From Octopus bimaculoides (Eukaryota), in contig NC_068988.1 in NCBI RefSeq assembly GCF_001194135.2, positions 20,947,119 to 21,009,469 of the forward strand: DNA of 62,351 bases, in the 5' to 3' direction. The stretch's first letter is position 1. Each line of letters starts with the position of its first letter. Under the pieces are notes generated by a model. It was not told the origin of the DNA, searched no databases, and saw only the letters and a program-made list of their open reading frames with translations. This document shows positions 13,112 to 62,351 of this stretch, one piece after another. Both the position numbers and the translations under genes were made by a program.

Positions 13112-13984
13112 CAGGATGCGATGGGTAACTTGTTGCCATTTTATATTCTTAATTTCGCACATGCGCATTGTTTGCTTTTGATTTTGTCGACTACACAGTA
13201 TAGTAGGGTCAGTTCATCACCATCTGTGAGAAAATCAGCACCATGGTGCAATTCACTCTGCCAGAAATTTAGAAACGACATGCTGTACTGCTTGGCATTT
13301 GCACTGGAAGCTCCAATATGAACATTTCAGAGTGTTTGGGTGTCAGTCTGAGAACAGTGCAATCTGAGGACATTATTGAGAATGATAAAAATCAAACATC
13401 AAGTCAACATCATGGTGTTTAGAGTGATCACTAATGATATCAACATCATGCTTCTATTCCTCTTCCCACATGGCCTCACAATCAACATGGAGGCCTACAT
13501 CAAGTGCATGGGGGAAGTAGTGCTGCCCTGGGTCAAGAGGGTGGCTGCTGGAAGACCCTATATCTGGCAACAGGACTCTACCCCATGCCACACAAGGAGA
13601 ACCCAGTCATAGCTGTCAGACAATTTCTGTGACCACAGCACCCCTAACATCTGGCCACTTAACTCCTTAGACTGCAACCCCCTTGATTATTATGTGTGGG
13701 GCACAGTTGAGAGAAAGACCAACAAAACTCCTTGTAACACCAAAGATGAACTGAAGACAAGTATTATGGCAGCATTCAAACAAGGAGACCATCCAGAAGA
13801 GTTGCAGATTCCAAAGTCATCTGGAGGCTGTAGTTGAAGCCAATGGTGATTTTAATGAATAACTTTACTCTAGTATTTCAAGATATTTTAATGTAATTTT
13901 GGCAAACATATTCTGTTAAAATGAGATGTCAATGTTATTTTCATTTCTGCGTAATTTAGATGACAGTCTATTCACTGCACCCTG
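13112..13984 (+). mobile_element. Decayed maT (DD37D-like) Tc1/mariner transposon
   Basis: Translates to WQQDSTPCHT...WPLNSLDCNPLDYYVWG...LEAVVEANGDF with a stop and frameshifts. D-to-D spacing is 36 here, consistent with DD37D minus one codon. Degenerate TIRs (CAGGATGCG.../...TGCACCCTG) with TA at the left end. Confidence 0.75.
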
Positions 13985-16752: not shown

Positions 16753-17289
16753 AACATACATATATACATACATGCATGCACACACACCGGTGCTAGTGCA
16801 GCTTACTCATTCTTAGTTGCCACTCTACCAGCATGGCCGGGTAATTTATTCAGACAGAGAATGGAAAACAGAGAAATCACCAACGCACCACCATTCAGCT
16901 GCTTAACATCCCCAAACACATCACATTGCAAAAAAAATAATTCAATGATATTTTTCAAAAGGCAGGCACACACACACACACACAATATGAGTTGTGTGTG
17001 TGTGTGTGTGTTTGTGTTTGTTCATAAAAACCAGACACTTTCAACTTGAAGAACACAAAACCTAAAGACATAGTAGATCATAAAATATATATTACGGCTG
17101 AATATGTTACTCCTTTCTGCCTCATATACCCAACACACACACACACACACAATACTGTAGGGGCTGAGATTTCTTTCGGTTCCTACTCTGATTATCCCTC
17201 CAATATGCAACAGAGGAAACTCAGCAATAATCTTTTTCCTTGTTTGTAAATTCAAACATACACATTTCTTTGTGCAGTTTTATGCATGT

Positions 17290-17376
17290 ACATGTACATA
17301 TAAATACATCTGTGTGTGTGTGTACATATATGTATGTATATATATATTTATATCTACATATATATATACATATACA

Positions 17377-17448
<72 letters not shown>

Positions 17449-18340
17449 TATGCATATGTATATATTTATGTATACATATGTATATATATATATATACATA
17501 TATATGTATACATATATATATGTATAAACATGCATATGTATACACATATACATGCATTTGTATATATATGCATATATATGTATATACACATATATATATA
17601 TATATATACATACATATATATATACATGTATACATATATATGTGAATACATATATATATATNNNNNNNNNNNNNNNNNNNNNNNNNNNNNNNNNNNNNNN
17701 NNNNNNNNNNNNNNNNNNNNNNNNNNNNNNNNNNNNNNNNNNNNNNNNNNNNNNNNNNNNNNNNNNNNNNNNNNNNNNNNNNNNNNNNNNNNNNNNNNNN
17801 NNNNNNNNNNNNNNNNNNNNNNNNNNNNNNNNNNNNNNNNNNNNNNNNNNNNNNNNNNNNNNNNNNNNNNNNNNNNNNNNNNNNNNNNNNNNNNNNNNNN
17901 NNNNNNNNNNNNNNNNNNNNNNNNNNNNNNNNNNNNNNNNNNNNNNNNNNNNNNNNNNNNNNNNNNNNNNNNNNNNNNNNNNNNNNNNNNNNNNNNNNNN
18001 NNNNNNNNNNNNNNNNNNNNNNNNNNNNNNNNNNNNNNNNNNNNNNNNNNNNNNNNNNNNNNNNNNNNNNNNNNNNNNNNNNNNNNNNNNNNNNNNNNNN
18101 NNNNNNNNNNNNNNNNNNNNNACGCACATTCATATATTATATATAAATATATACATATATGTATGCAAATATGTGTGTGTGTGTGTGTGGATACATGTAA
18201 TATATACAAATATCTATGTATACATATAATATATATATATAAACACACACACGCACATTCATATATTATATATAAATATATACATATATGTATATACATG
18301 TATGAACTATATACACACACACACACACACACAGATACAT
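17290..18340. repeat. (TA)n/(CA)n microsatellite block with assembly gap
   Basis: Direct reading; N-run at 17662-18121. Other N-runs at 2637-3420, 7249-7258, 26062-26320, 36232-36582, 38475-38531, 50090-50949 and ~60120-60665, most flanked by simple repeats or SINEs. Confidence 0.9.
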
Positions 18341-41220: not shown

Positions 41221-43504
41221 TATTACAGACGGGGGAAGAGGGAGGAGGGAGAGAGTGAGAAAGAGAGGAAGTAACATAGATTGAGCGAAGGAGTGGAGGT
41301 AAGAGAGAAAGGAAAGAGTAAGGATGAAGACAGGGGGGAACGGTTAAGATATAAAGAGGAAGAGATAGAATGTGATTGAAAGAAAGAAATAAAAAGAAAT
41401 ACCAAGTGGAAATGTTGAACGATAGATAGAAGAATAGAGGGCGAGAAAAATACAGAGAGAAACATGAGAGGGGTGTTATGAGGTGAACGAACATGAGGAA
41501 ACAGAAAGAAGATAGAAAAAGAAAAACAGATATATCGAGAGAGAAAGATGTTTAGAGAGATTTAGGGAGAAAAAGAGAAGGTGCGAGAAACAGGCATTGA
41601 GAAATTCAGGGAGAAAATAAACAAAAAGGAAAATTAAACACAGCTAGAGAGAAAACATGTTCATAAAGAGAGAGAGAGAGAGAGAAATGTACTAAAGGAG
41701 GGAGATATTGAAATGGAAAAGAAAGAGAGAAAGTAGGTACGAAGAAATTTAAGGGTGGGACATATGGAAAGAGAGGCGAAAAGAGAAAGATAGATTGGTT
41801 TGATAGAGTGAGAATGTCATAGAAAAAAGGAACACAGTGAGACGAAGGGGACAGCTCTAGTACGACAACAGAGAGGAATAGGGGCAGTTAGCAGGCAGTT
41901 CGGTGCTTGCAGTGAGGTATGGAGAAGTAATAGGGGTAAACATGTGTATGAGGGGAAGCTTAGACAATGAAAGAGTAAGCGGAAGGCGGTTTAGAATCAT
42001 CATTTCCTGACATACACGAGACTATGGCATGTCAATTTCGAACACTGGACCAGGGTACTGCTACTACTTCAACTACCAGTACTAATACCCAACGAAGAAC
42101 CCCTGCGTAGTCGTTCGACCTACTAGAAACCGCAGTCAAGTCGCGCCCTACGGTCTTAGTAAAGGAAATTACACAGTAGATTAACGTACTGCTAAAAGAA
42201 TGGGATGTTTGCGACTGGAATGCTTGATTCAAGGCTGACCTAGGCCTAAACGACAACTACTACTACTAAGTTTCTATGACTAAGCAGAACACCAATATCT
42301 AGAAAGGTGTAATCGATTGTTTCGACTTTTAGTATTTTACTGGTACGTGTTTATCGAACCTGGAAGGATAAACATTGGAGTCAATCCCGTTGGAATTACT
42401 GTTTACTTTTGTAAATCTTGATTTATTATATCAATCATGTAAATAATCTCCAGGAACATTTAGGCTGAGAACCATTAATTTTAAAGCATCAAATGGTTAG
42501 AGCTCGGAGAGGAGTTCGATATTTTCCTTCCTCGTGGCACTTGGACTTATCGAACTCTGCTTAGAACTCTCTCCTGTTGACTAACTGTTGCAGACGCAGA
42601 CAATCACTAATTTCCCCGGAAATCGGACTTTTCTCTGAAGCATCAAATGCAGTACTTTTACTGCTTTAAACGTAATTTATGGTTTTGTACCTATGTTAGA
42701 AGTCATTATTAATAATAACTGTTTCTAACATAGGCATAATGCCAGATTTTTTTTGTTTTTCGGATAGGGTGGAAAACATAATACCAGAAAGATTAAAGGC
42801 AGGCGCGATTTGAACTCGGAATGTAACCACCCCGAACAAATATTGTAAGACATTTAATCCGTTGATCTAACGATTCCGCTATTTATGGCCCTTCGTTTCT
42901 GACATAGACATAGACACAAAGCCTTAAATTTAAGGATAAAAGAAAAACCGATTATATTGACCCTATATTTCCCTGAAACTTTATTTTATTGACACCTCCA
43001 CCACGGAAGTTTAACTGGCAAAATCGATTTCGGAGGAATTTGAACTCGACATAAAAACCTGTTACGAAATACCGCATTATTATTATTTTGTCCGTGGCTC
43101 TAACGATTCTGTCAATCTCCAGTCGCAGTTTATTGAATCAACCCCACTACATAGCTGGTACTTATTGATTATAACAAGATCAAAGGTAAAAATTAGTTCT
43201 GACATGATTCCAAATCAGAACATAGAAGAAAAATACAGAACTATATTTACTCCTTGGCAATTCAGCTAATTCATCTTAAATTGTTTTAATAATAGCAATT
43301 TTGTCAACTAGGGATCCCTACACGGTTGATTACACCATTAGATATATCAACCGTATCTTTTTTCTTTGATCACACCTTACTGCCTTAAAAAAGGAAGGAC
43401 ACATTGGATAATATAGTCCTAGATATACTATGTCTAAAAAGACCGGGTGGTCATGGCTTGAACTCTTATTCAGTAAGGGTTGACCTGTGGATAAGCAACA
43501 CCGT

Positions 43505-43840
43505 TATCATTTAATGTCTGCTTCCCATGCTGGCATGGGATGGACGGTTTGACAGGAGCTGCTGAGCCAGAGGACTGCATCAAATTCAACTGTCTGCTTT
43601 GGTATGATTTCAACAGCGGGATGCCCTTCTTAATGCCAATCATTTTACTGAGTGACTGGATGTTTTTTGCTTAGCACCAGCACCAGTGAGGTCACCAAGT
43701 ATATTGCAAAACAAGACTGCCATTGAGTAGGGGATAGTACCGAGGGAAGAGGCTTTGTGCCAGGTGATGAGCTGCTAGAGTATGACAGAGAGACAGAAAG
43801 AGGTGTCTTCTGTAGAGGAGATACATAGCTATTGCAGTTG
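43505..43840 (-). repeat. RTE-tail-related dispersed repeat (family I)
   Basis: Alignable copies at ~912-1250, 27890-28200, 29485-29760, 49225-49360. Confidence 0.55.
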
Positions 43841-44563
43841 GGAAATGAGAGAGAGTAGATGGTGATGAAGATGTGCAGAGGCATACCTTCAAGTTACAGG
43901 AAGATGAACATAAGTGGTGTACACAGGACTGGATAGGGTGAGTGGACAGGTAAGTTCACAAGAGAGGGGTGAATGCAATGAGTGAATATGGGTGGAGAGA
44001 TGTGGAATATAAGGAAGATGAGGTATGAGGGAGAGATTTGTCAAGGACAGATTGTATGCAGGGGAATAGACAGACATAAACTATAATTTCTTAGTTTAAC
44101 ACTGGGACACAAATTTGCAAAAGAAAATGTATAGGGGATGATCATGGCTTAAACTCATTAACAGGTTTGCTCATTAAGGGCTGGCCTAAGAATAAACAAC
44201 AGCAACAACTAAAATTATTTATTTGTTTGACTCTAGGACACAGATTTATAAAAGAAAAATATAAATCAGAATGAACAAGGGATTATTTTATTAAGCTTTC
44301 AGGAAGAATTGTTATAAGTTAAACTCACAGGAATTGAACACAGAATGTAGACAACCAAAACTAATTACCATTAGACATTTAATGCACCAATCCAGTATTT
44401 GTTCTCTGTTGAGTAGGATATATGCTCTTAGTAGACTACATGTATCATGGTTTGAATTTCAACCTGCTTTGCTAAATCTAGATATTTAATTTCAGTTGCT
44501 GTATAATTATACATATAGTATTTTGTGTGCAAGATTCTTGATGTGGATACGTGTGTTGAAAGA

Positions 44564-45124
44564 TATACAATTAAACCTTGGGAGAGGCATTATGCCAGTA
44601 ATAAACACACGCACTGGTTCAGTCCTTTATTAATTTATATAGTTTTTTGTTAAATTATTTCATTGCACTCTTGCAATCTCTTCAGTAACTTGTCTCTCCA
44701 CTTCCATTTATTTTGTCCGTGGCTCTAACGATTCTGTCAATCTCCAATCGCAGTTTATTGAATCAACCCTACTACATAGCTGGTACTTATTGATTGTAAC
44801 AAGATCAAAGGTAAAAATTAGTTCTGACATGATTTCCTATTAGAAATACTTCAGACAGAGAATCAAATAATATATTATAAACACGAACACATAAGTGCGT
44901 GCACACATACGAGCTTGCACACACTCACATGCTCATACCGAACAGTTTCAAAACAACGCCAGATCATACATTCAAAATAAATGGAAGTGGAGAGACAAGT
45001 TACTGAAGAGATTGCAAGAGTGCAATGAAATAATTTAACAAAAAATTATATAAATTAATAAAGGACTGAACCAGTGCGTGTGTTTATTACCGGCATAATG
45101 CCTCTCCCAAGGTTTAATTGTATA
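44564..45124. repeat. 151-bp inverted repeat enclosing templated copies of neighbouring sequence
   Basis: Arms 44564-44714 and 44974-45124 have 2 mismatches. 44708-44834 copies 43083-43209 (3 mismatches); 44832-44879 copies 46002-46049 (identical). Confidence 0.9.
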
Positions 45125-45297
45125 CATATAGTAACAAGCCTAGAAATAAAAAAGGTACACTTACCCATGCACAGAAATCTATATTGCTATAGCCTTAATT
45201 AGGAATAACAAAAAAAGATTCATAGAGGAGACTAGGTTGCATCCTTAAAAATTGTATTATTTGTCAGGTTGTGTATGTATGTATGTATAAATATATA

Positions 45298-45855
45298 AAA
45301 CTGGATATCAGAGGCATCAGACGTTGTGTGCAAGAGAGAGGACTGCACTGGTTTGGTCATGTGATGCATATGGATGAGGACAGCCATGTAAAGAAGTGCT
45401 GAGCTCTAACTGTGGAGGGTACCTGTAGAAGGGGTAGACCCAGGAAGATGTGGGATGAAGTGGCAAGAAAGGATCTTTGGACACTGGGCCTCACTAAGGA
45501 AAACAAGAGATCATGAGATGTGGTGATTTACTGTACTTGATAAGATGCATCAAGCTAAATAAAATCACTGTCCTCTACACATACAGGCCTGTCCTTTCTG
45601 GTGCCAGTGCCACATAAACACACCCATGCCAGTGCTGCATAAATGCACCCACGTCGGTGCTGTGTAAATGCACCTATGTTGGCACCTATGTTGGCAGCAC
45701 ACTCTCTTAAGTGGCTGGTATTAGGAAGGGCATCCAGTCATAGAAACCATGCCACAACAGACAAATGGAGTCTGGACAGCTCCCAGCTAGCCAGTTCTAT
45801 GCCAAACCATCCAACCAATGCCAGCATGGAAATCAGATGTTGAACAATGATGATA
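45298..45855 (+). mobile_element. 5'-truncated RTE-clade LINE (ORF C-terminus plus 3' UTR and (ATG)n tail)
   Basis: KLDIRGIRRCVQERGLHWFGHVMHMDED...RRGRPRKMWDEV matches the RTE WxGHVxRM...GRPxxxW C-terminus. It runs directly into the TTAGGAAGGGCATCCAG...ATGATGAT tail shared with many short repeats here. Confidence 0.75.
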
Positions 45856-46141
45856 TATATATACATATGTATGTATGCGTATGTATATTATATAACAAAG
45901 CAGCAATCTGGAAAATTTTAGGTATTATTTATTCACCATTACACATGTTTCATTTACTAATAGGAATCACAAAATGTACATGCTGGATAAACATGTAAGA
46001 AATTTCCTATTAGAAATACTTCAGACAGAGAATCAAATAATATATTATATTATATATATATATATTTACATTTCTTTCCAGACTGGTTTGGAATATATTC
46101 AACTCAATCTTATTCACCATGATCTAGATTACATTTCCAGT

Positions 46142-46990
46142 ATGCCTAAAGCTACAAAATTTTCCAAAATTGAACAAGGGAAGATTCTTGCACTGAAAGT
46201 AAAAGGAATGAGTAACCAGAAGATTGCCAAGAAGATTTGGTGAAGCAGTGGATAATTTCCTGAAAGATTTTAACGGCTACAACAAGGTTCATGCTGGTGG
46301 ACATCCCAAGGCTACATCAGAAAGGGATGAAAGGGCCACTGTCAGAGCCGTGAAGAAGTCATACTGCTTTTCTGTTTCTCGGCAGCATCAGACGTGGGAT
46401 GGTGAATGGATCAAAGTTCTGTTCTCTGAGAAAAAATGGAATTTGGATTACTTCCAACGCTTATAAGTATTACAGGACAGATAAATGTATACAAAATTCT
46501 ATATATTCCAAGTGGCAGAACAGCAGAGGAAGTCTTATGGTGTGGGGAACAAAATCTGCCAATGGGAAGCTGTCACTTGCCATCATAGATGGTCATTTCA
46601 ATGCTGTGCAATGCATAGATATGTTGGACAGGGATTGGCAAAGAAGGTAGAAGACTTCATGACAAGAACTTCATATTTCAACAGAACAATGCTCCTATTC
46701 ATCTAGCAAAGCAGCTTTGAATTTCCTCCATGCGATTGAGGTTGAAGTCATGCCATGGCCAGCAAGAAATCCTGACCTTAATCCTATAGAGAATGCCTGG
46801 AGATATTTCATGAATGTTGTGTACAGCAAAAGCAAACAGTATTCATCTGTTGATGAACTGGAAGTGGCAATGAAGAAGGCCTGGGAGCCTGGGAAGAGTT
46901 TCCATTTGATCTGCTGCAGAAGTTGATAGGCAACATGAAATCGTGTGTCTTTGAAGTAATTCATAAAGGTGGTAGTCAAACACACAATTG
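46142..46990 (+). pseudogene. Tc3-like (DD34E) transposase remnant
   Basis: MPKATKFSKIEQGKILAL...GGHPKATSERDERATVR; VLFSEKKWNLD (first catalytic D deleted); GSLMVWG; FQQNNAPIH (second D changed to N); WPARNPDLNPIENAW. Frameshifted. Confidence 0.85.
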
Positions 46991-47599
46991 TTAATGTATT
47001 GCATGAGAATATCATTGAAATATATCATAATTTTCTTGTTTTACATCATTTCTGCAACATTATTCAACTTAGCGTTATAATTTTGAACAAGGGGTTTCTG
47101 GCTCTGTATGTTTTTTTGAATTATCATCTAATTCATTTTTAGATTTCAATAAATTTGAATATTGCAATGCCTTCTTCTATTCCATTTCCTATCTAGAGGT
47201 GAGTTTTGTGAATTTGGATAGTATAGTTCACCAGAAAAAAACAGACAGTGCTCTGGCTTTATAGTTTTGAAGAGTAGTTTATATATTTGCAAAACCCAAA
47301 GGATAGCAAAATTTGATATAAAGGAGAGGGGTATATTTGTTAAATAACTTACTGATAGATAGTAGTGTTTGTTTTTCAAACTAAATCCTATGGGGTAAAT
47401 ATATAGATTTTACCAGCCACTGCATCATTAGATTAAATTTATTTAACACATTGGATAGATATAATGAAATGGCTTAATTGTATCAAAAGTACTGAAACAC
47501 ACCAAATCAAATAACAAAATTCAGTTGCAGCAACACCATCTCAACATCACTCACTGGTAAATGCCTTTCAAAAGTACAAGAGAATAGAGCCAAAACAAC

Positions 47600-49714: not shown

Positions 49715-50089
49715 CTCTTTTACTCTTTTACTTGTTTCAGTCTTTTGGCTGTGGCCATACTGGAGCACCGCCTTTAGTCGAGCAAATCGACTCCAGGACT
49801 TATTCTTTGGAAGCCTAGTACTTATTCTATCGGTCTCTTTTGTCAAACCGCTAAGTTACGGGAACGTAAACACACCAGCATCAGTTGTCAAGCGATGTTG
49901 GGGGAACAAACACAGACACACAAACACATACACACATACATATATATATATACATATATACGACGGGCTTCTTTCAGTTTCCATCTACCAAATCCACTCG
50001 CAAGGCTTTGGTCGGCCCGAGACTATAGTAGAAGACACTTGCCCAAGATGCCATGCAGTGGGACTGAACCCGGAACCGTGTGATTGGTA
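49715..50089 (-). mobile_element. Family A+B SINE, head in gap
   Basis: Reverse complement aligns to 12420-12790. Confidence 0.8.
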
Positions 50090-51533: not shown

Positions 51534-51606
<73 letters not shown>

Positions 51607-51820
51607 GTGTGTATATGTTTGTGTGTTTGTGTTTGTCCCCACAATATCGCTTGACAACCGATGCTGGTGTGTTTACGTCCCCGTAACTTAGCGGTTCGGC
51701 AAAAGAGACTGATAGAATAAATACTAGGCTTCCAAAGAATAAGTCCTGGGGTCGATTTGCTCGATTAAAGGCGGTGCTCCAGCATGGCCACAGTCAAATG
51801 ACTGAAACAAGTAAAAGAGT
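51410..51820 (+). mobile_element. Family A+B SINE with a small head deletion
   Basis: Aligns to 12391-12785; the B-box segment is missing. Confidence 0.8.
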
Positions 51821-54252
51821 AATTTGTAGATTACTAACATTGAAAAAGCAGAATGTCATGTAAATAACTAACTACTGAGGTACATATTCTATTTTAGAAT
51901 ACCGGCTATATCAATGTTCTAAAAACCATTAATATTCATACATTTATTTCTCTAATAATGGCTGGTTGAAGTGGCTGACACCTTGAAATGTTTTCTTTAT
52001 ATTCAAATTTAATTTCATCAGATTTATTGCCATTTTATGTACAACAAATATTCCTTGATATCCTAAGTTTCAATATGGATTAAACCATTTTAGAACAACA
52101 TGAATAAAGCATGTTACAACAAAAGTAAATACACTAAAAATACACACACAAAAAAAAAAGCATAAAATTACACATATAGGCGCAGGAGTGGCTGTGTGGT
52201 AAGTAGCTTGCTTACCAACCGCATGGTCCCGGGTTCTTCTCAAATGAGTGGCACTAATCAGTCATGAAGACTAGACTGAAATTCCAATACTGACTCAGCT
52301 CATTGAAATGATGGCCCATCACTCCTTCCCTGCCAAAGATGCAGGAATACTTTCAGTATTTATCTCGCCTGCCCCTGTTAGACTCCCTTCATTGCTTCTA
52401 AGCTTCTGTTTGAGAAATCAAAGTTGGTCGGTACTATCCTCATGTCAGCTTCCAAGGCACTATAACATGGTTGATCTTGGAATTCCATGGAAGAGATGAA
52501 TCTGTGATGATAGGCACAGCACCAACTGTAGGGGGCTACCAAGCATTCAGTTTATCAAATGTGGCTTTACTATCAGCCTACCTTGCTATGCTGTAGTGCA
52601 GGAACCAAAATTATGATTACTACCTTACCCTTGCCATTTTGTCACCGTTGTTGGTCAGACAATTTGGATCTTCCATCAGTTATTGATACTAGAGCAGATA
52701 CTGCCCAACATCAGAACAAGTCACCTTGTTAGAAGCTTACTGTTGGAATCAAGACATTTTGTGAATCAACAGTGTCATCTGGCTCCTTTCCTTTGTGTAA
52801 GCTTGAAGTTGGTCCCTGATTGCATATTCGACAAAGCCATATTTGCAGCTAGCTTCCATATGCAAAGGCCACTTCACTATCTACCACCTATGGATGTTAA
52901 AGAATGCATTGGAATGTTAGCCAATTCTGAAGTGACAAGTAAGTAGTATAAACATGAGACACGGGTTGTGATGCTGAAAAATTTTATGGAATTTCTCCAG
53001 AGAAATTGACCATAACATCAAAGCAAAAAGCAGATAGAATTATTATAAGATCTTGGGTACTGCAATTCTCCGTGATAACAGAGTGGATATAAGAATGGCA
53101 ATTCTTAGCGGGCTATGGATTCTGTCTGTCACTGATGAAGTGTGACATACAGAAACATGTATCCTCAGTCTGATGATGATATTCATAGCCCAGTTCAGTG
53201 TTTTCACACACACCGTCTATAAGGAAAATTTCTCTTCTCAGACAGTAGTCACAGCAAAAGTCTTTCCACATTTGAATGTACACAAATATTTTGAATATTA
53301 ATGTACACATCATATCTTAATAATCACTTCTTTGTGTGCTCTTAATTAATTCTGACTTGACAAAACTCTGCACACACCAGCAAATATATTATTTGCTGTT
53401 TACATATAAGAATGAATGTTCTTAGTGGGCTGTTAATGATGAATTCAGTGTCTTTGACAGGTGATGTGTAACAACACAGAAACATGTGTGCTACTCTCTA
53501 ATGACGTTGTTCATAGTCTAGCTCAATGTTTTCACAGACATTGCCTGCAAGGTGAATTTCTCTTCCCAGACAGTTATTCTAGAGAATGTCTTTTCACATT
53601 TGAGTGTACACAAAAATTTTAAATATAAATTAACACAATTTTAAAAAATTGTATATGATAACTAAAGACAGGTTCAATAGAACTATAGACACATTTTAGC
53701 ACAATTTCATTTCATGTTTTTCTATATTCTTTTCATTCTGTTCGTGATTTCACTCATTGACTTATGACCATTTTGGGACACATCCTTCAAACACATAGCT
53801 GAATATAATCAACTCTGTTCTTCATTGGTACTTATCAACCTCAGAATAGTATTTCAGTGTAGTTATATTTCATCAGCTACAGATTCTGAATTAGTCATTC
53901 ATAGCCCTCTAAGGACAGTCATTCTTATATGTAAACAGCAAAAAATATATTTGCTGTTGTGTACAAAGCTTTGTCGGGCTGAATTAATTAATTAAAATTA
54001 TGCAAAGTAATGATTATAAAAATAAAGATGTGTACATTTATATTTAACATAATTCATATTGACTCAAATGTAGAAAAACCTTTGTGATGATTGTCTAGGA
54101 AGAGAAATACTCGTTATAGAGAATGTGTGTGAAAACCCAGAGGTGTGTCAAGAATGATATCATCAGATTGTAGAATACATGTTTCTGTATGCTAAAGCAA
54201 AGTCAGCCTATGCAGGAATTGAATTCAGTAAATAACTGGACATAATCAAATA

Positions 54253-56934: not shown

Positions 56935-57212
56935 TCTGCCGCTGGACTGGCTCTTGTGCAGGTCGCACGTAAAATACACCATTTTGAGCATGGCCGTTGC
57001 CAGTACCGCCTGACTGGCCTTCGTGCCGGTGGCACGTAAAAGCACCCACTACACTCTCTGAGTGGTTGGCATTAGGAAGGGTATCCAGCTGTAGAAACTC
57101 TGCCAGATCAGATTGGAGCCTGGTGTAGCCGTTTGGTTCACCAGTCCTCAGTCAAATCGTCCAACCCATGCTAGCATGGAAAGTGGACGTTAAACGATGA
57201 TGATGATGATGA
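56935..57212 (+). mobile_element. Family C repeat
   Basis: Aligns to 59005-59290. Confidence 0.8.
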
Positions 57213-58711: not shown

Positions 58712-59262
58712 ATAAGACCTCTGCCAGGGGTGTAGCCAGCCCACTTATGCGTACCTTGCCTTCATTGGACACTAAACTCCGCTTGCAAAGACCTGTTGAG
58801 GCAAGTGAAATCGAAATCGAACTAAATTCGACGACTGGCACCCATGCCAACGTCGTCTCCTTCATTGGACACGAAACTCAGCTTGCGAAGACTTATTGGG
58901 GCAAGCGAAAGCAAAATCGGGATGGCACCTGTGCCCAGTGTCGCTTTTCTGGCACTTGTGCTTGCACCATGTGTAATGACTTTCGAGCGAGATCGTTGCC
59001 AGTGCCCCTGGACTAGCTCTTGTGCGGGTAGCACATAAAATACACAATTTTGAGCGTGGTTGTTGCCAGTATTGCCTGACTGGCCTTCGTGCGGGTGACA
59101 CGTAAAAGCACCTACTACACTCTCGGAGTGGTTGGCATTAGGAAGGGCATCCAGCTGTAGAAACTCTGCCAAATCAGATTGGAGCCTGGTGTCACTGTCG
59201 GGCTCCACCAGTCCTCAGTCAAATCGTCCAACCCATGCTAGCATGGAAAGCGGACATTAAAC

Positions 59263-59297
<35 letters not shown>
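58712..59297 (+). mobile_element. Long RTE-tail repeat (family C) with an internal ~100-bp tandem duplication
   Basis: Ends CCAACCCATGCTAGCATGGAAAGCGGAC(A/G)TTAAACG(ATG)n; the CCTTCATTGGACAC... unit occurs twice. Other copies at 5500-5892 (-), 19451-19603 (-), 19700-19851 (+), 56935-57212 (+), 60720-61021 (-). Confidence 0.8.
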
Positions 59298-59298
<1 letters not shown>

Positions 59299-60719
59299 AT
59301 ATATATATTCTTTTAGTCATTGACTTGTTTCAGTCATGTGACTGTGTCCATGATGGAGCATAACCTTTAGTCAAACAAATTGACCCTAGAACTTATTCTT
59401 TGTAAGACTAGTACTTATTTTATCGGCCTCTTTTGCCGAACCGCTAAGTTATGGGGGCTTAAACATACCAACATCGGTTGTCAAGTGATGGTGTGGGTCG
59501 GAGAAACACAGACAATGTGTAGACATTTGCAAACAACTGCTGGCATCTCCTTCAGATACCCATTTTTGATATTGAATTGTAACTAGGGATAGAAAATGGT
59601 TTTATTTCCTTTGAGTCACTCTGTAACTTCTGACTGTTATTCATAAAATATATCCATTAGGCGGTGAACTGGCAGAATTGTTAGCATGCCAGCAGAAATG
59701 CTTAGCAGCATGTTTTCTAACTTAACATTCTGAGTTCAAATGCCATGGAGGTCGACTGTGCCTTTTATCCTTTTGGGGCTGATAAAATAAATTAACATGA
59801 AATTTTGATGGAAGGTTTTAATTTAGGAAGTTTTTATCATTAGAACCAGGGACAGGCTCAGTGGGGTTCATATCAAAAGGTCAAAGCTAGCATTCATACA
59901 ATGTTCTTTTATTCTTTCATTTTTTTTTTACTTGTTTCAGTCATTTGACTGCGGCCCTGCTGGAGTACCACCTTATAGGGTTTTTTTAGTCAAAGAAATC
60001 AGCCCCAGGACTTATTTTTTGTAAGCCTAGTACTTATTCTATTGGTCTCTTTTGCCAAACTGCTAAGTTACTAGGACATAAAGACACCAACACCAGTTGT
60101 CAAGTGGTGATGGGTGGGGNNNNNNNNNNNNNNNNNNNNNNNNNNNNNNNNNNNNNNNNNNNNNNNNNNNNNNNNNNNNNNNNNNNNNNNNNNNNNNNNN
60201 NNNNNNNNNNNNNNNNNNNNNNNNNNNNNNNNNNNNNNNNNNNNNNNNNNNNNNNNNNNNNNNNNNNNNNNNNNNNNNNNNNNNNNNNNNNNNNNNNNNN
60301 NNNNNNNNNNNNNNNNNNNNNNNNNNNNNNNNNNNNNNNNNNNNNNNNNNNNNNNNNNNNNNNNNNNNNNNNNNNNNNNNNNNNNNNNNNNNNNNNNNNN
60401 NNNNNNNNNNNNNNNNNNNNNNNNNNNNNNNNNNNNNNNNNNNNNNNNNNNNNNNNNNNNNNNNNNNNNNNNNNNNNNNNNNNNNNNNNNNNNNNNNNNN
60501 NNNNNNNNNNNNNNNNNNNNNNNNNNNNNNNNNNNNNNNNNNNNNNNNNNNNNNNNNNNNNNNNNNNNNNNNNNNNNNNNNNNNNNNNNNNNNNNNNNNN
60601 NNNNNNNNNNNNNNNNNNNNNNNNNNNNNNNNNNNNNNNNNNNNNNNNNNNNNNNNNNNNNNNNNCTTCTTCATTGTGATTAAAATGGCACCAAAAGGAA
60701 AAGAATTGTCTGAAGATTT

Positions 60720-61021
60720 CATCATCATCATCATCATCATCGTTGTTTAACGTCCGCTTTCCATACTAGCATGGGTTGGATGATTTGACTGAGGACTGGT
60801 GAAACCAGATGGCTACACCAGGCTCCAATCTGATTTGGCAGAGTTTCTACAGCTGGATGCCCTTCCTAACGCCAACCACTCCAAGAGTGTAGTGGGTGCT
60901 TTTACGTGCCACCGGCATGAAGGCCAGTCAGGTGGTACTGGCAACGGCCACGCTCAAAATGGTGTATTTTATGTGCCACCTGCACAGGAGCCAGTTCGGC
61001 GGCACTGGCAATGATCTCGCT
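60720..61021 (-). mobile_element. Family C repeat abutting the Tc1 remnant
   Basis: Reverse complement aligns to 58985-59285. Confidence 0.8.
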
Positions 61022-61865
61022 TGAAAGACAATTATTTTTATTTTGCCCGAGAATGGTTTAGGATACAGGTTGATTAGCAAACGAATACATGTTCGTGTAA
61101 ACACAGTTGCCGAAGTAATTCAGAAGTACAAAGATACTGGATGGCTCATCCAGGTCGTCCTTCTATTTTAACTACGTGTGATATTCGCCACATCCACTTA
61201 AGAAGTGTCTTCTGTTAGTGGAAAGAGTGTATATGCCCAAACAGTTCGCTGAAGTTTGTACCAGTGTGGTTTTCATGGATGCATTCCTCATAGGAAGCTT
61301 CTCCTCATTGCTAGGCATAAATCAAGTCGTCTTTCTTTTGCCAAAACCTATGTGAGAAAGGTGAAGGAGTTTTGGAATAAAATTTTTTTTCTGACGAGAC
61401 TAAAATCAACTTGTTTGGGTCAGATGGTATTAAACAAGTATGACAACGACTAGGTTGAAGATAATAGTGACAAATGCACCATGCCTACCATGAAACACGG
61501 TGGTGGGAGTATTATGCTTTGGGGATGCATGAGTGCGGTTGCTGTGGGAGGACTCACATTTATTGAGAGAAGAATGGGTTCAAGGCTCTATTGTGACATA
61601 TTGCAGAAAACAATGTTGAAAAGCATCATGGAACTAGGAAGGCATTCCATGTTCCAACATGATAATGACCCTAAACACACTTCAAAGATAACGATAAAAA
61701 GGGAAAAATTTTGCCTTGGCCTACCGTGTCACTTGATTTAAACCCAATAGAACATCTGTAGGATATTTTGAAAAGAAGGTTTGGGAGAAAAAAACCCACA
61801 ATGTAACACAGTTGAAAGACATCATTCAGGATGAAAGGAGGTCAATTTCATCTAATACAATAAAT
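61022..61865 (+). pseudogene. Tc1-like (DD34E) transposase remnant, 5' end cut by a SINE
   Basis: GLGYRLISKRIHVRVNTVAEVIQKYKDTG (HTH region); SDETKINLFGSDG; KHGGGSIMLWGC; FQHDNDPKH; LNPIEHL. Stops and frameshifts. Confidence 0.85.
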
Positions 61866-62351
61866 GTGAAAGCTAATTTTTGTGTGTCAGTGTGGCACAC
61901 TTTGGCCCCACTCAAATTTTGGGGAAGGGATTAAGTTGATTACATCAACCCCACTACATAACTGGTACTAATGTTATTGACCCTGAAAGGATGAAAAGCA
62001 AAGTCAATCTCAGCAGAATTTGAACTCAAACCCTAATGGCAGACGAAATACTGCTAAGCATTTCACCTGGCGTGCTAACGATTCTGCCAGCTCACTGCCT
62101 TAATATAATATAATATAATAAATGTGAATGTCCGTGTGTCACACTTTTTCAACTTTACTCCTAGAGGTTGTAGCCCAACATATCATAACATTTTGGAATC
62201 AAGCTTACTCCGTGAAGTAAATTAAAAACATTCTGGGCTGAATCTGGACCCGTAATCCTGAAATTTTGGATCCCCAAGTTTTCGTTAATGTGATTGTTTC
62301 CAGCAATTTTTTTACGTGACTTTTTGCAATAAATTTTTTTGTACAATAACA

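What the first reader, a model, noticed from the sequence alone, without database searches (positions are those of the whole stretch)
43083..46049. Patchwork insertion from three local templates inside a 151-bp inverted repeat
Seen: 44564-44879 consists of an inverted copy of 44974-45124 (151 bp, 2 mismatches), a copy of 43083-43209 from 1.6 kb upstream (127 bp, 3 mismatches) and a copy of 46002-46049 from 1.2 kb downstream (48 bp, identical). Junctions share 7-bp (TTATTTT) and 3-bp (ATT) microhomologies. Established: this is the signature of microhomology-mediated template switching (Pol theta/MMBIR/FoSTeS). Alternative inference: the arms read TA|CAATTAAACC...GGTTTAATTG|TA like a pogo-type TIR with TA duplication, so it could be a fold-back transposon that captured flanking DNA from both sides. 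One donor sits just 5' of the Tc3-like transposase, and the site is ~3.4 kb upstream of the putative Abl promoter.
Basis: partly seen in the sequence, partly recalled or inferred. Interest (0 to 1): 0.75.

Follow-up and report, generated by a model that had tools for sequence, protein, structure and literature searches.

The report
Hairpin built by local template switching
A 312-bp insertion in an octopus-like intergenic region is stitched from three nearby templates joined at short shared sequences, which created a 152-bp hairpin: a clean example of a known copying error during DNA replication or repair, with no sign of a function.

Summary
Arms 44564-44715 and 44973-45124 are a 152-nt inverted repeat with 2 mismatches. 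Next to the left arm lie a 127-nt copy of 43083-43209 (3 mismatches) and a 48-nt exact copy of 46002-46049.

I add three points.
- Donor 43083-43209 spans the junction of two adjacent SINE-like copies. It runs collinearly with that family across 43209/43210, so the ATT junction is new and not the empty site of a 2.8-kb insertion.
- The whole 312-bp insert (44568-44879) comes from local templates and is bounded by TATA on both sides. The junction overlaps are TATA, TTATTTTG, ATT and TATA.
- All patches differ from their templates by about the same amount (1.3-1.7%, transitions only), which fits one old event rather than an assembly chimera.

Best reading: one serial, microhomology-primed template-switch event (MMBIR/FoSTeS or polymerase-theta type) made the hairpin in place.

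Main rival: a TA-flanked MITE-like transposon whose interior was rebuilt by abortive gap repair. I could not exclude it, because no genome of the source species was searchable. The arm has no other copy in the 112 kb of octopus DNA at hand.

The neighbouring gene remnant is Tc1/Tc3-type. No Abl coding sequence was found. This is a new instance of a known kind, of modest interest.

The parts
44568..44879 (+). The inserted patchwork (312 bp). It is made entirely of three locally templated segments.
   Evidence: every base is covered by the inverted copy of 44973-45120, the copy of 43083-43209 or the copy of 46002-46049.
44564..44715 (+). Left hairpin arm, the reverse-complement copy of 44973-45124. 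Under the best model this is the newly made arm.
   Evidence: 150/152 complementary. Both mismatches are transitions, one at a CpG kept in the right arm.
44973..45124 (+). Right hairpin arm. Under the best model this is the ancestral sequence that served as template for the left arm.
   Evidence: No relative elsewhere in the window or in L001.
44708..44834 (+). Copy of donor 1 (X1') in direct orientation.
   Evidence: 124/127 identical to 43083-43209, with 3 transitions.
44832..44879 (+). Copy of donor 2 (X2') in direct orientation.
   Evidence: 48/48 identical to 46002-46049.
44880..44972 (+). Unique 93-nt part of the loop (U). It has no local template and is presumed ancestral. It opens with an alternating purine-pyrimidine (CA/CG) tract.
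   Evidence: only low-complexity matches elsewhere; a 16-nt period repeated 2.3 times.
43083..43209 (+). Donor 1 (X1). It comprises the last ~32 nt of SINE-like copy a, an 8-nt linker, and the first ~87 nt of SINE-like copy b.
   Evidence: copy a is 42926-43114 (nhmmer E 1.7e-13) and copy b is 43123-43225. The model alignment runs unbroken across 43209/43210.
46002..46049 (+). Donor 2 (X2). A unique sequence that abuts a (TA)n run and the left edge of the Tc1/Tc3-like remnant.
   Evidence: Homology to the O. vulgaris paralogue starts only at about 46066. No SINE-model hit.
44564..44567 (.). Junction J0: TATA. It is shared by the left flank and the inverted template (45121-45124).
   Evidence: The palindromic 4-mer extends the inverted repeat. 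P(overlap >= 4 bp) = 0.022.
44708..44715 (.). Junction J1: TTATTTTG, shared by the end of the arm and the start of X1.
   Evidence: P(overlap >= 8 bp) = 0.00065.
44832..44834 (.). Junction J2: ATT, shared by the end of X1 and the start of X2.
   Evidence: P(overlap >= 3 bp) = 0.065. Shown to be a novel junction.
44876..44879 (.). Junction J3: TATA at the end of X2'. It repeats the TATA at 44564-44567, so the insert is bounded by a 4-bp direct repeat.
   Evidence: Read directly from the sequence.
46064..46991 (+). Context, not a working part: a degenerate Tc1/Tc3-type transposase remnant with several frameshifts and stops.
   Evidence: Pfam DDE_3 at E 1.2e-8; Sleeping Beauty catalytic domain at E 7e-17; relatives carry the Tc3 HTH domain PF11427. 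80% nucleotide identity to a paralogue in O. vulgaris.

Best explanation
One mutational event made the insert in place. A growing DNA strand ending in ...GAAAGATATA (44567) left its template at the edge of an alternating purine-pyrimidine tract. It then copied three nearby templates in turn, re-priming each time on a short overlap.
1. It copied the opposite strand of 45120-44973, primed on TATA. This made the inverted left arm.
2. It copied 43083-43209, primed on TTATTTTG.
3. It copied 46002-46049, primed on ATT.
4. It returned to the original site through TATA and continued into AACACG... (44880).

The result is a 312-bp insertion with no loss of flanking sequence, and a new 152-bp hairpin with a 257-nt loop. 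The event belongs to the serial microhomology-mediated template-switch class: MMBIR/FoSTeS at a stalled fork, or iterative polymerase-theta-type synthesis at a break.

Shown: the four segments, their templates, the overlaps, and the ancestral continuity of donor 1 with its right flank.

Inferred: the single-event history, the order of the switches, the trigger, and that the right arm was ordinary host DNA rather than a transposon end. No function is indicated. It is a scar a few per cent old.
For: - All 312 inserted bases have a template within 1.6 kb, and nothing is left unexplained.
- Every junction has an overlap of 4, 8, 3 and 4 bp. Counting TATA only once, the joint chance is about 1e-6 from the simulated distribution.
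- Donor 1 spans a unique junction of two SINE-like copies. The SINE model aligns straight through 43209/43210 in the outer locus (model positions 19-126). In the inner copy the alignment stops before ATT. So the outer locus is the source and ATT is a new joint.
- Other copies of that SINE-like family in the window match donor 1 at only 62-79%, against 97.6% for the local donor.
- The arms differ at 2/152 positions and the direct patches at 3/175, all transitions. That fits a single age for all patches.
- The arm has no other copy in the window or in 50 kb of O. vulgaris DNA. It has no internal sub-repeats.
- The alternative orientation, with the right arm as the copy, leaves 93 nt untemplated and gives no overlap at the return (read).
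Against: - No empty site, second individual or sister species could be examined, so the ancestral state is a prediction only.
- The arm copy number was tested in only about 112 kb of a genome I take to be gigabase-sized. A low- or mid-copy MITE family would have been missed.
- TA...TA flanks and a 560-bp size are also what a Tc1/mariner MITE looks like.
- As far as I recall, templated tracts of 127-150 nt are long for polymerase-theta repair, and a 557-nt jump is long for classic short template switches.
- TATA is common in this AT-rich DNA, and donor 2 ends in a TA-rich run, so the closing overlap is weaker evidence than its nominal P value.
- The window is a gapped draft assembly, and I had no reads.
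Confidence: 0.58

Rival explanations
1. The arms are the ends of a TA-targeting non-autonomous DNA transposon (MITE or fold-back type) that inserted here. After an excision, gap repair from the sister chromatid aborted and switched templates. It extended the left end with an inverted copy of the right subterminal region and filled the interior with flanking DNA from both sides, as proposed for the mosquito MITE Goblin.
For: - TA|CAATT...AATTG|TA flanks and a 561-bp size.
- Tc1/mariner remnants lie at 46064-46991, 61000-61900 and 13352-13834.
- The same template-switch junctions are expected in this model.
- A precedent exists for TIR lengthening by template switching, and for 6-8 bp microhomologies, in MITE birth (PMC3814204).
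- A 10-mer like the arm end (CAATTAAGCC) sits at 47471-47480, past the transposase remnant.
Against: - No second copy of the arm in 112 kb.
- The 10-mer match is within chance: 0.43 matches to the degenerate pattern are expected in the window, and the only match outside the two arms is this one.
- The arm shows no similarity to the flanks of the neighbouring remnant.
- From memory, the CAATT end is not the usual CAG(T/G) of Tc1/pogo ends.
- The TATA that closes the insert at 44876-44879 would be a coincidence under this model.
- The arm has no internal binding-site-like repeats.
Confidence: 0.28
2. This is an assembly or library artefact: a chimeric molecule, or a wrong join in a short-read draft, that does not exist in the animal.
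For: - The window is a draft with eight N gaps.
- From memory, inverted chimeras with microhomology junctions are known products of strand-displacing amplification.
- No reads could be checked.
Against: - The copies differ from their templates at 5 of 327 positions, and an artefactual copy should be identical.
- Overlaps of 3-8 bp are far below assembler k-mer sizes.
- The structure sits inside an 11.5-kb gap-free block.
Confidence: 0.07
3. 43083-43209 and 46002-46049 were once contiguous. The inner copy would preserve that 'empty site', and the 2.8 kb between them would be a later insertion with an ATT target-site duplication.
For: ATT is present once in the inner copy and at both outer edges, exactly as a 3-bp target duplication would appear.
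Against: - The outer sequence continues collinearly with the SINE-like family across 43209/43210. MAFFT suggests this continues to about 43275.
- 46002-46049 is not SINE-like.
- The supposed insertion would contain the very copy it post-dates.
Confidence: 0.02

Closest known systems
MMBIR/FoSTeS templated insertions (serial microhomology-mediated template switching; e.g. MMB-TI events, PMC8421209)
   Same: Several templated segments are joined in series, with an overlap at every junction. The templates are nearby, and at least one segment is inverted relative to its template.
   Different: The MMBSearch tool of that paper looks for inverted templates within 100 bp and for insertions from 10 bp up to read length. 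Here the tracts are 48-148 nt and the templates lie 0.1-1.5 kb away. This event is an old germline one in an invertebrate, not a somatic or disease event.
Short template-switch mutations that create hairpins (four-point model, PMC5453318; RNA hairpins, PMC8794818; de novo miRNAs, bioRxiv 10.1101/2023.04.19.537475)
   Same: A reverse-complement copy of adjacent sequence creates a near-perfect stem in one step.
   Different: That model covers a single short-range switch and return. It explicitly leaves out long-range switches and multiple successive rounds. Here there are four switches, two of them to direct-orientation templates.
Polymerase-theta end joining with templated inserts (PMC4912351, PMC5068794)
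   Same: Microhomology-primed synthesis in repeated cycles, from templates in cis or in trans, including snap-back copying.
   Different: As far as I recall, such inserts are typically tens of nucleotides or fewer, from templates very close to the break. Whether that enzyme acted here cannot be told from sequence.
MITE birth by abortive gap repair with template switching (Goblin, Gnome and Elf from Ozma in Aedes, PMC3814204)
   Same: TA-flanked inverted ends, 6-8 bp microhomologies at internal joints, and TIRs lengthened by an inverted copy of the opposite subterminal region.
   Different: Those families have a known autonomous parent, and Gnome alone has 480 copies. Here no parent and no second copy were found, and the filler comes from host DNA on both sides of the site.
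Fold-back (FB) transposons
   Same: Long inverted arms around a variable middle.
   Different: As I recall, FB arms are built of tandem sub-repeats. These arms have none.

Membership tests
Serial microhomology-mediated template-switch insertion (MMBIR/FoSTeS type) | Every inserted segment has an identifiable template nearby. | tested here: met
   312 of 312 bases are templated within 1.6 kb.
Serial microhomology-mediated template-switch insertion (MMBIR/FoSTeS type) | Overlap at each junction beyond chance. | tested here: met
   Overlaps of 4, 8, 3 and 4 bp. Simulated P values are 0.022, 0.00065 and 0.065.
Serial microhomology-mediated template-switch insertion (MMBIR/FoSTeS type) | The junctions are novel, not inherited adjacency. 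| tested here: met
   The SINE model runs across 43209/43210 in the donor locus but stops before ATT in the copy.
Serial microhomology-mediated template-switch insertion (MMBIR/FoSTeS type) | The insert is absent from the ancestral allele (an empty site exists). | not testable with these tools
   No eukaryotic genome collection could be searched by DNA. Searches by encoded protein sequence found nothing at this locus.
Tc1/mariner or pogo MITE | Terminal inverted repeats. | tested here: met
   152-nt arms at 98.7%, far longer than most MITE TIRs.
Tc1/mariner or pogo MITE | TA target-site duplication. | tested here: inconclusive
   TA is present on both sides, but as part of a palindromic TATA that equally extends the inverted repeat.
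Tc1/mariner or pogo MITE | Multiple dispersed copies. | tested here: inconclusive
   None in the 62-kb window or in 50 kb of O. vulgaris DNA. Metagenome and prokaryote scans were empty but uninformative. The whole genome was not available.
Tc1/mariner or pogo MITE | Ends matching those of an autonomous element. | tested here: inconclusive
   No similarity to the flanks of the neighbouring remnant beyond a chance-level 10-mer. That remnant has no recognisable ends of its own.
Short template-switch mutation (four-point model) | A single switch and return, with only a reverse-complement fragment inserted. | tested here: not met
   Two further direct-orientation fragments lie between the inverted fragment and the return point.
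Fold-back (FB) transposon | Arms composed of tandem sub-repeats. | tested here: not met
   No direct repeats inside the arm.

The most novel reading that the evidence does not exclude
This is a snapshot of a MITE-like element being born from ordinary host DNA. A template-switch error created a TA-flanked, 152-bp-armed fold-back with no transposon ancestor. Tc1/mariner transposases in the genome could later mobilise it. Alternatively, if transcribed, it would supply a long double-stranded RNA stem for small-RNA production or A-to-I editing next to a gene.
Probability: 0.08. Interest if true: 0.6.

Novelty: new member of a known kind. Interest (0 to 1): 0.3.

Why it matters
- It is an unusually legible germline example of multi-step template switching. 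All templates survive within 3 kb, and all four joints can be read.
- It shows how a long perfect hairpin can arise in one step from non-repetitive DNA.
- It is a practical warning. Structure-based MITE finders would call this a transposon. Repeat-based reasoning could also misread the ATT joint as a target-site duplication.
- It has no evident effect on a gene.

Tried and rejected
- Exact look-ups of 11 window ORFs in the protein collection: none on record.
- A composite six-frame query of arm and donor translations against 5.8 billion proteins: no hit. Raw octopus ORFs are evidently not in that collection, so copy number could not be reached this way.
- Exact-pattern scans of metagenome contigs (twice) and prokaryotic genomes with arm sequences: empty, as expected for animal DNA.
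- The one octopus locus retrieved (L001, O. vulgaris OX597840.1) is a paralogue, not the orthologue. It has no arm copy.
- Looking for an old repeat that spans either predicted empty site: only low-complexity matches, so uninformative.
- Homeologous recombination between two SINE copies at the ATT joint: donor 2 gives no hit to the SINE model.
- Ectopic gene conversion: the flanks of the copied tracts share no homology with the donor flanks.
- RNA splicing as the source of the donor 1 / donor 2 joint: no GT...AG on either strand, read.
- Rfam: nothing relevant.
Full report
**Observation**

The structure is in the sequence as described, with small corrections.
- Arms 44564-44715 and 44973-45124 form a 152-nt inverted repeat with two mismatches.
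- The 257-nt loop starts with a 127-nt copy of 43083-43209 (three mismatches).
- A 48-nt exact copy of 46002-46049 follows.
- The loop ends with 93 nt (44880-44972) that have no template in the window beyond low-complexity matches.
- The arm overlaps the first copy by 8 bp (TTATTTTG). The two copies overlap by ATT.
- The arm and both donors are otherwise unique in the window.
- This is the only 99% inverted repeat in the window. The other long inverted repeats are SINE pairs at 89-93%.
- As single-stranded DNA the region folds at -184 kcal/mol, z = -29.5 against shuffles.

**Setting**

The window is a gapped draft of AT-rich, repeat-dense animal DNA. It has eight N runs, none between 38532 and 50089.

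It appears to come from an octopus.
- The closest named relative of the neighbouring transposase remnant is a gene model in Octopus vulgaris.
- A SINE in the window matches copies on that O. vulgaris chromosome at 80-92%.

The remnant at 46064-46991 is a frameshifted Tc1/Tc3-type transposase.
- Pfam DDE_3 matches at E 1.2e-8.
- The Sleeping Beauty catalytic domain matches at E 7e-17.
- Relatives carry the Tc3 HTH domain.

Its homology to the O. vulgaris paralogue begins at about 46066. Donor 46002-46049 is therefore host sequence just outside it, separated by a (TA)n run.

No Abl-like coding similarity exists in the window.

ATT sits at the right edge of donor 1, at the left edge of donor 2, and once in the inner copy. 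That is exactly what a 3-bp target-site duplication would look like. In that reading the two donors were once contiguous and the inner copy preserved the empty site. I tested this.

Donor 1 turns out to be a composite of two adjacent copies of a ~200-bp SINE-like family, which has eleven copies in the window.
- It holds the last ~32 nt of copy a, an 8-nt linker, and the first ~87 nt of copy b.
- A profile built from seven other copies aligns to the outer locus without a break across 43209/43210, through model position 126.
- A multiple alignment suggests the collinearity continues to about 43275.
- In the inner copy the profile alignment stops before ATT.
- Donor 2 gives no hit to the profile.

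So donor 1 has always been continuous with its present right flank. The ATT joint is new, and the outer locus is the source.

Other family copies in the window match donor 1 at 62-79%, against 97.6% for the local donor.

**The closing junction**

The four bases before the left arm's CAATT are TATA (44564-44567). The last four bases of the copy of donor 2 are also TATA (44876-44879). The four bases after the right arm are TATA as well (45121-45124).

Because TATA is its own reverse complement, two steps become possible. A strand ending in ...GATATA can prime on the opposite strand at 45121-45124 and copy leftwards, making the left arm. After the third template, a strand again ending in TATA can re-anneal at the point of departure.

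The insert is therefore 312 bp (44568-44879). It is fully templated, bounded by a 4-bp direct repeat, and involves no loss of flanking sequence.

In random junctions from the same block, overlaps of at least 8, 4 and 3 bp have P = 0.00065, 0.022 and 0.065. Counting TATA only once, the joint chance is about 1e-6.

The opposite polarity, with the right arm as the copy, leaves 93 nt untemplated and gives no overlap at the return. I reject it.

**Age and reality**

The arms differ at 2 of 152 positions and the direct copies at 3 of 175.
- All five differences are transitions. One is a CpG retained in the right arm but CpA in the left.
- Equal, non-zero divergence fits one event followed by ordinary decay.
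- It argues against a chimeric read or a mis-join, which would be identical to its templates.
- Assembler joins also occur at k-mer-length overlaps, not at 3-8 bp.
- I could not inspect reads, so a small probability of artefact remains.

**Mechanism**

The best account is a single serial template-switch event.
- The nascent strand disengaged at the border of an alternating purine-pyrimidine (CA/CG) tract that begins at 44880. The tract is read from the sequence; that it acted as the trigger is inference.
- It copied the opposite strand 0.1-0.56 kb ahead.
- It then copied a tract 1.5 kb behind, then a tract 1.1 kb ahead, and then returned.
- This is the logic of MMBIR/FoSTeS, or of iterative microhomology-primed repair synthesis (PMC8421209, PMC4912351).
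- It goes beyond the single switch-and-return four-point model, which explicitly excludes multiple successive rounds (PMC5453318).
- Which polymerase acted, and whether the lesion was a stalled fork or a break, cannot be read from sequence.

**The transposon rival**

The TA...TA flanks and the size fit a Tc1/mariner MITE. MITE birth by abortive gap repair is documented, including template switching that lengthens a TIR with an inverted copy of the other end (Goblin, PMC3814204). That model needs the same junctions, plus a pre-existing element.

Evidence against it:
- There is no second arm copy in 112 kb.
- The arm is not similar to the flanks of the adjacent remnant.
- A 10-mer resemblance at 47471-47480 is within chance, with 0.43 matches expected in the window.
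- The arm has no internal repeats.
- The closing TATA would be a coincidence.

None of this is decisive. The decisive test is genome-wide copy number or an orthologous empty site, and it could not be run.

**Verdict**

The template-switch reading is supported and sharpened. The transposon reading is demoted but not excluded. The contiguous-donor reading is rejected. This is a well-preserved instance of a known mutational mechanism, with no evidence of function.

Noticed in passing
window 41230-41980: A ~750-bp purine-rich (GA) tract on the + strand (GC skew 0.52, AT skew 0.38). It is triplex-prone and lies 1.1 kb upstream of donor 1. It could act as a replication barrier, but I did not test that.
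   Followed up: partly
window 42305-43275: Four same-orientation copies of a ~200-bp SINE-like family are packed into 1 kb (42305-42397, 42785-42882, 42926-43114, 43123-43225). Seven more copies lie elsewhere in the window.
   Followed up: yes
window 61000-61900 and 13352-13834: Two further Tc1/mariner transposase remnants, different from the one at 46064-46991.
   Followed up: no
L001 10001-39919 (O. vulgaris OX597840.1, 2.30-2.35 Mb): The annotated 'pif1-like helicase' gene model (P0010) takes in a Tc3-like transposon fragment at its 3' end. The fragment starts at about 39551 and continues past the end of the model to about 40213. (TG)n lies before it and (CA)n after it. This looks like a chimeric transposon-derived annotation.
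   Followed up: partly
window 58977-59288 / 60719-61030; 49720-49960 / 51582-51822; 56937-57138 / 60803-61004: Several SINE pairs in inverted orientation at 89-93% identity within 1.4-3.7 kb. These are potential long double-stranded RNA formers if co-transcribed.
   Followed up: no
window 17258-17661: A long TA/CA-type palindromic microsatellite block abutting an assembly gap (17662-18121). It is a likely cause of that gap.
   Followed up: no
window 44880-44940: An alternating purine-pyrimidine (CA/CG) tract, Z-DNA-prone, starts exactly at the proposed departure and return point of the template switch.
   Followed up: partly
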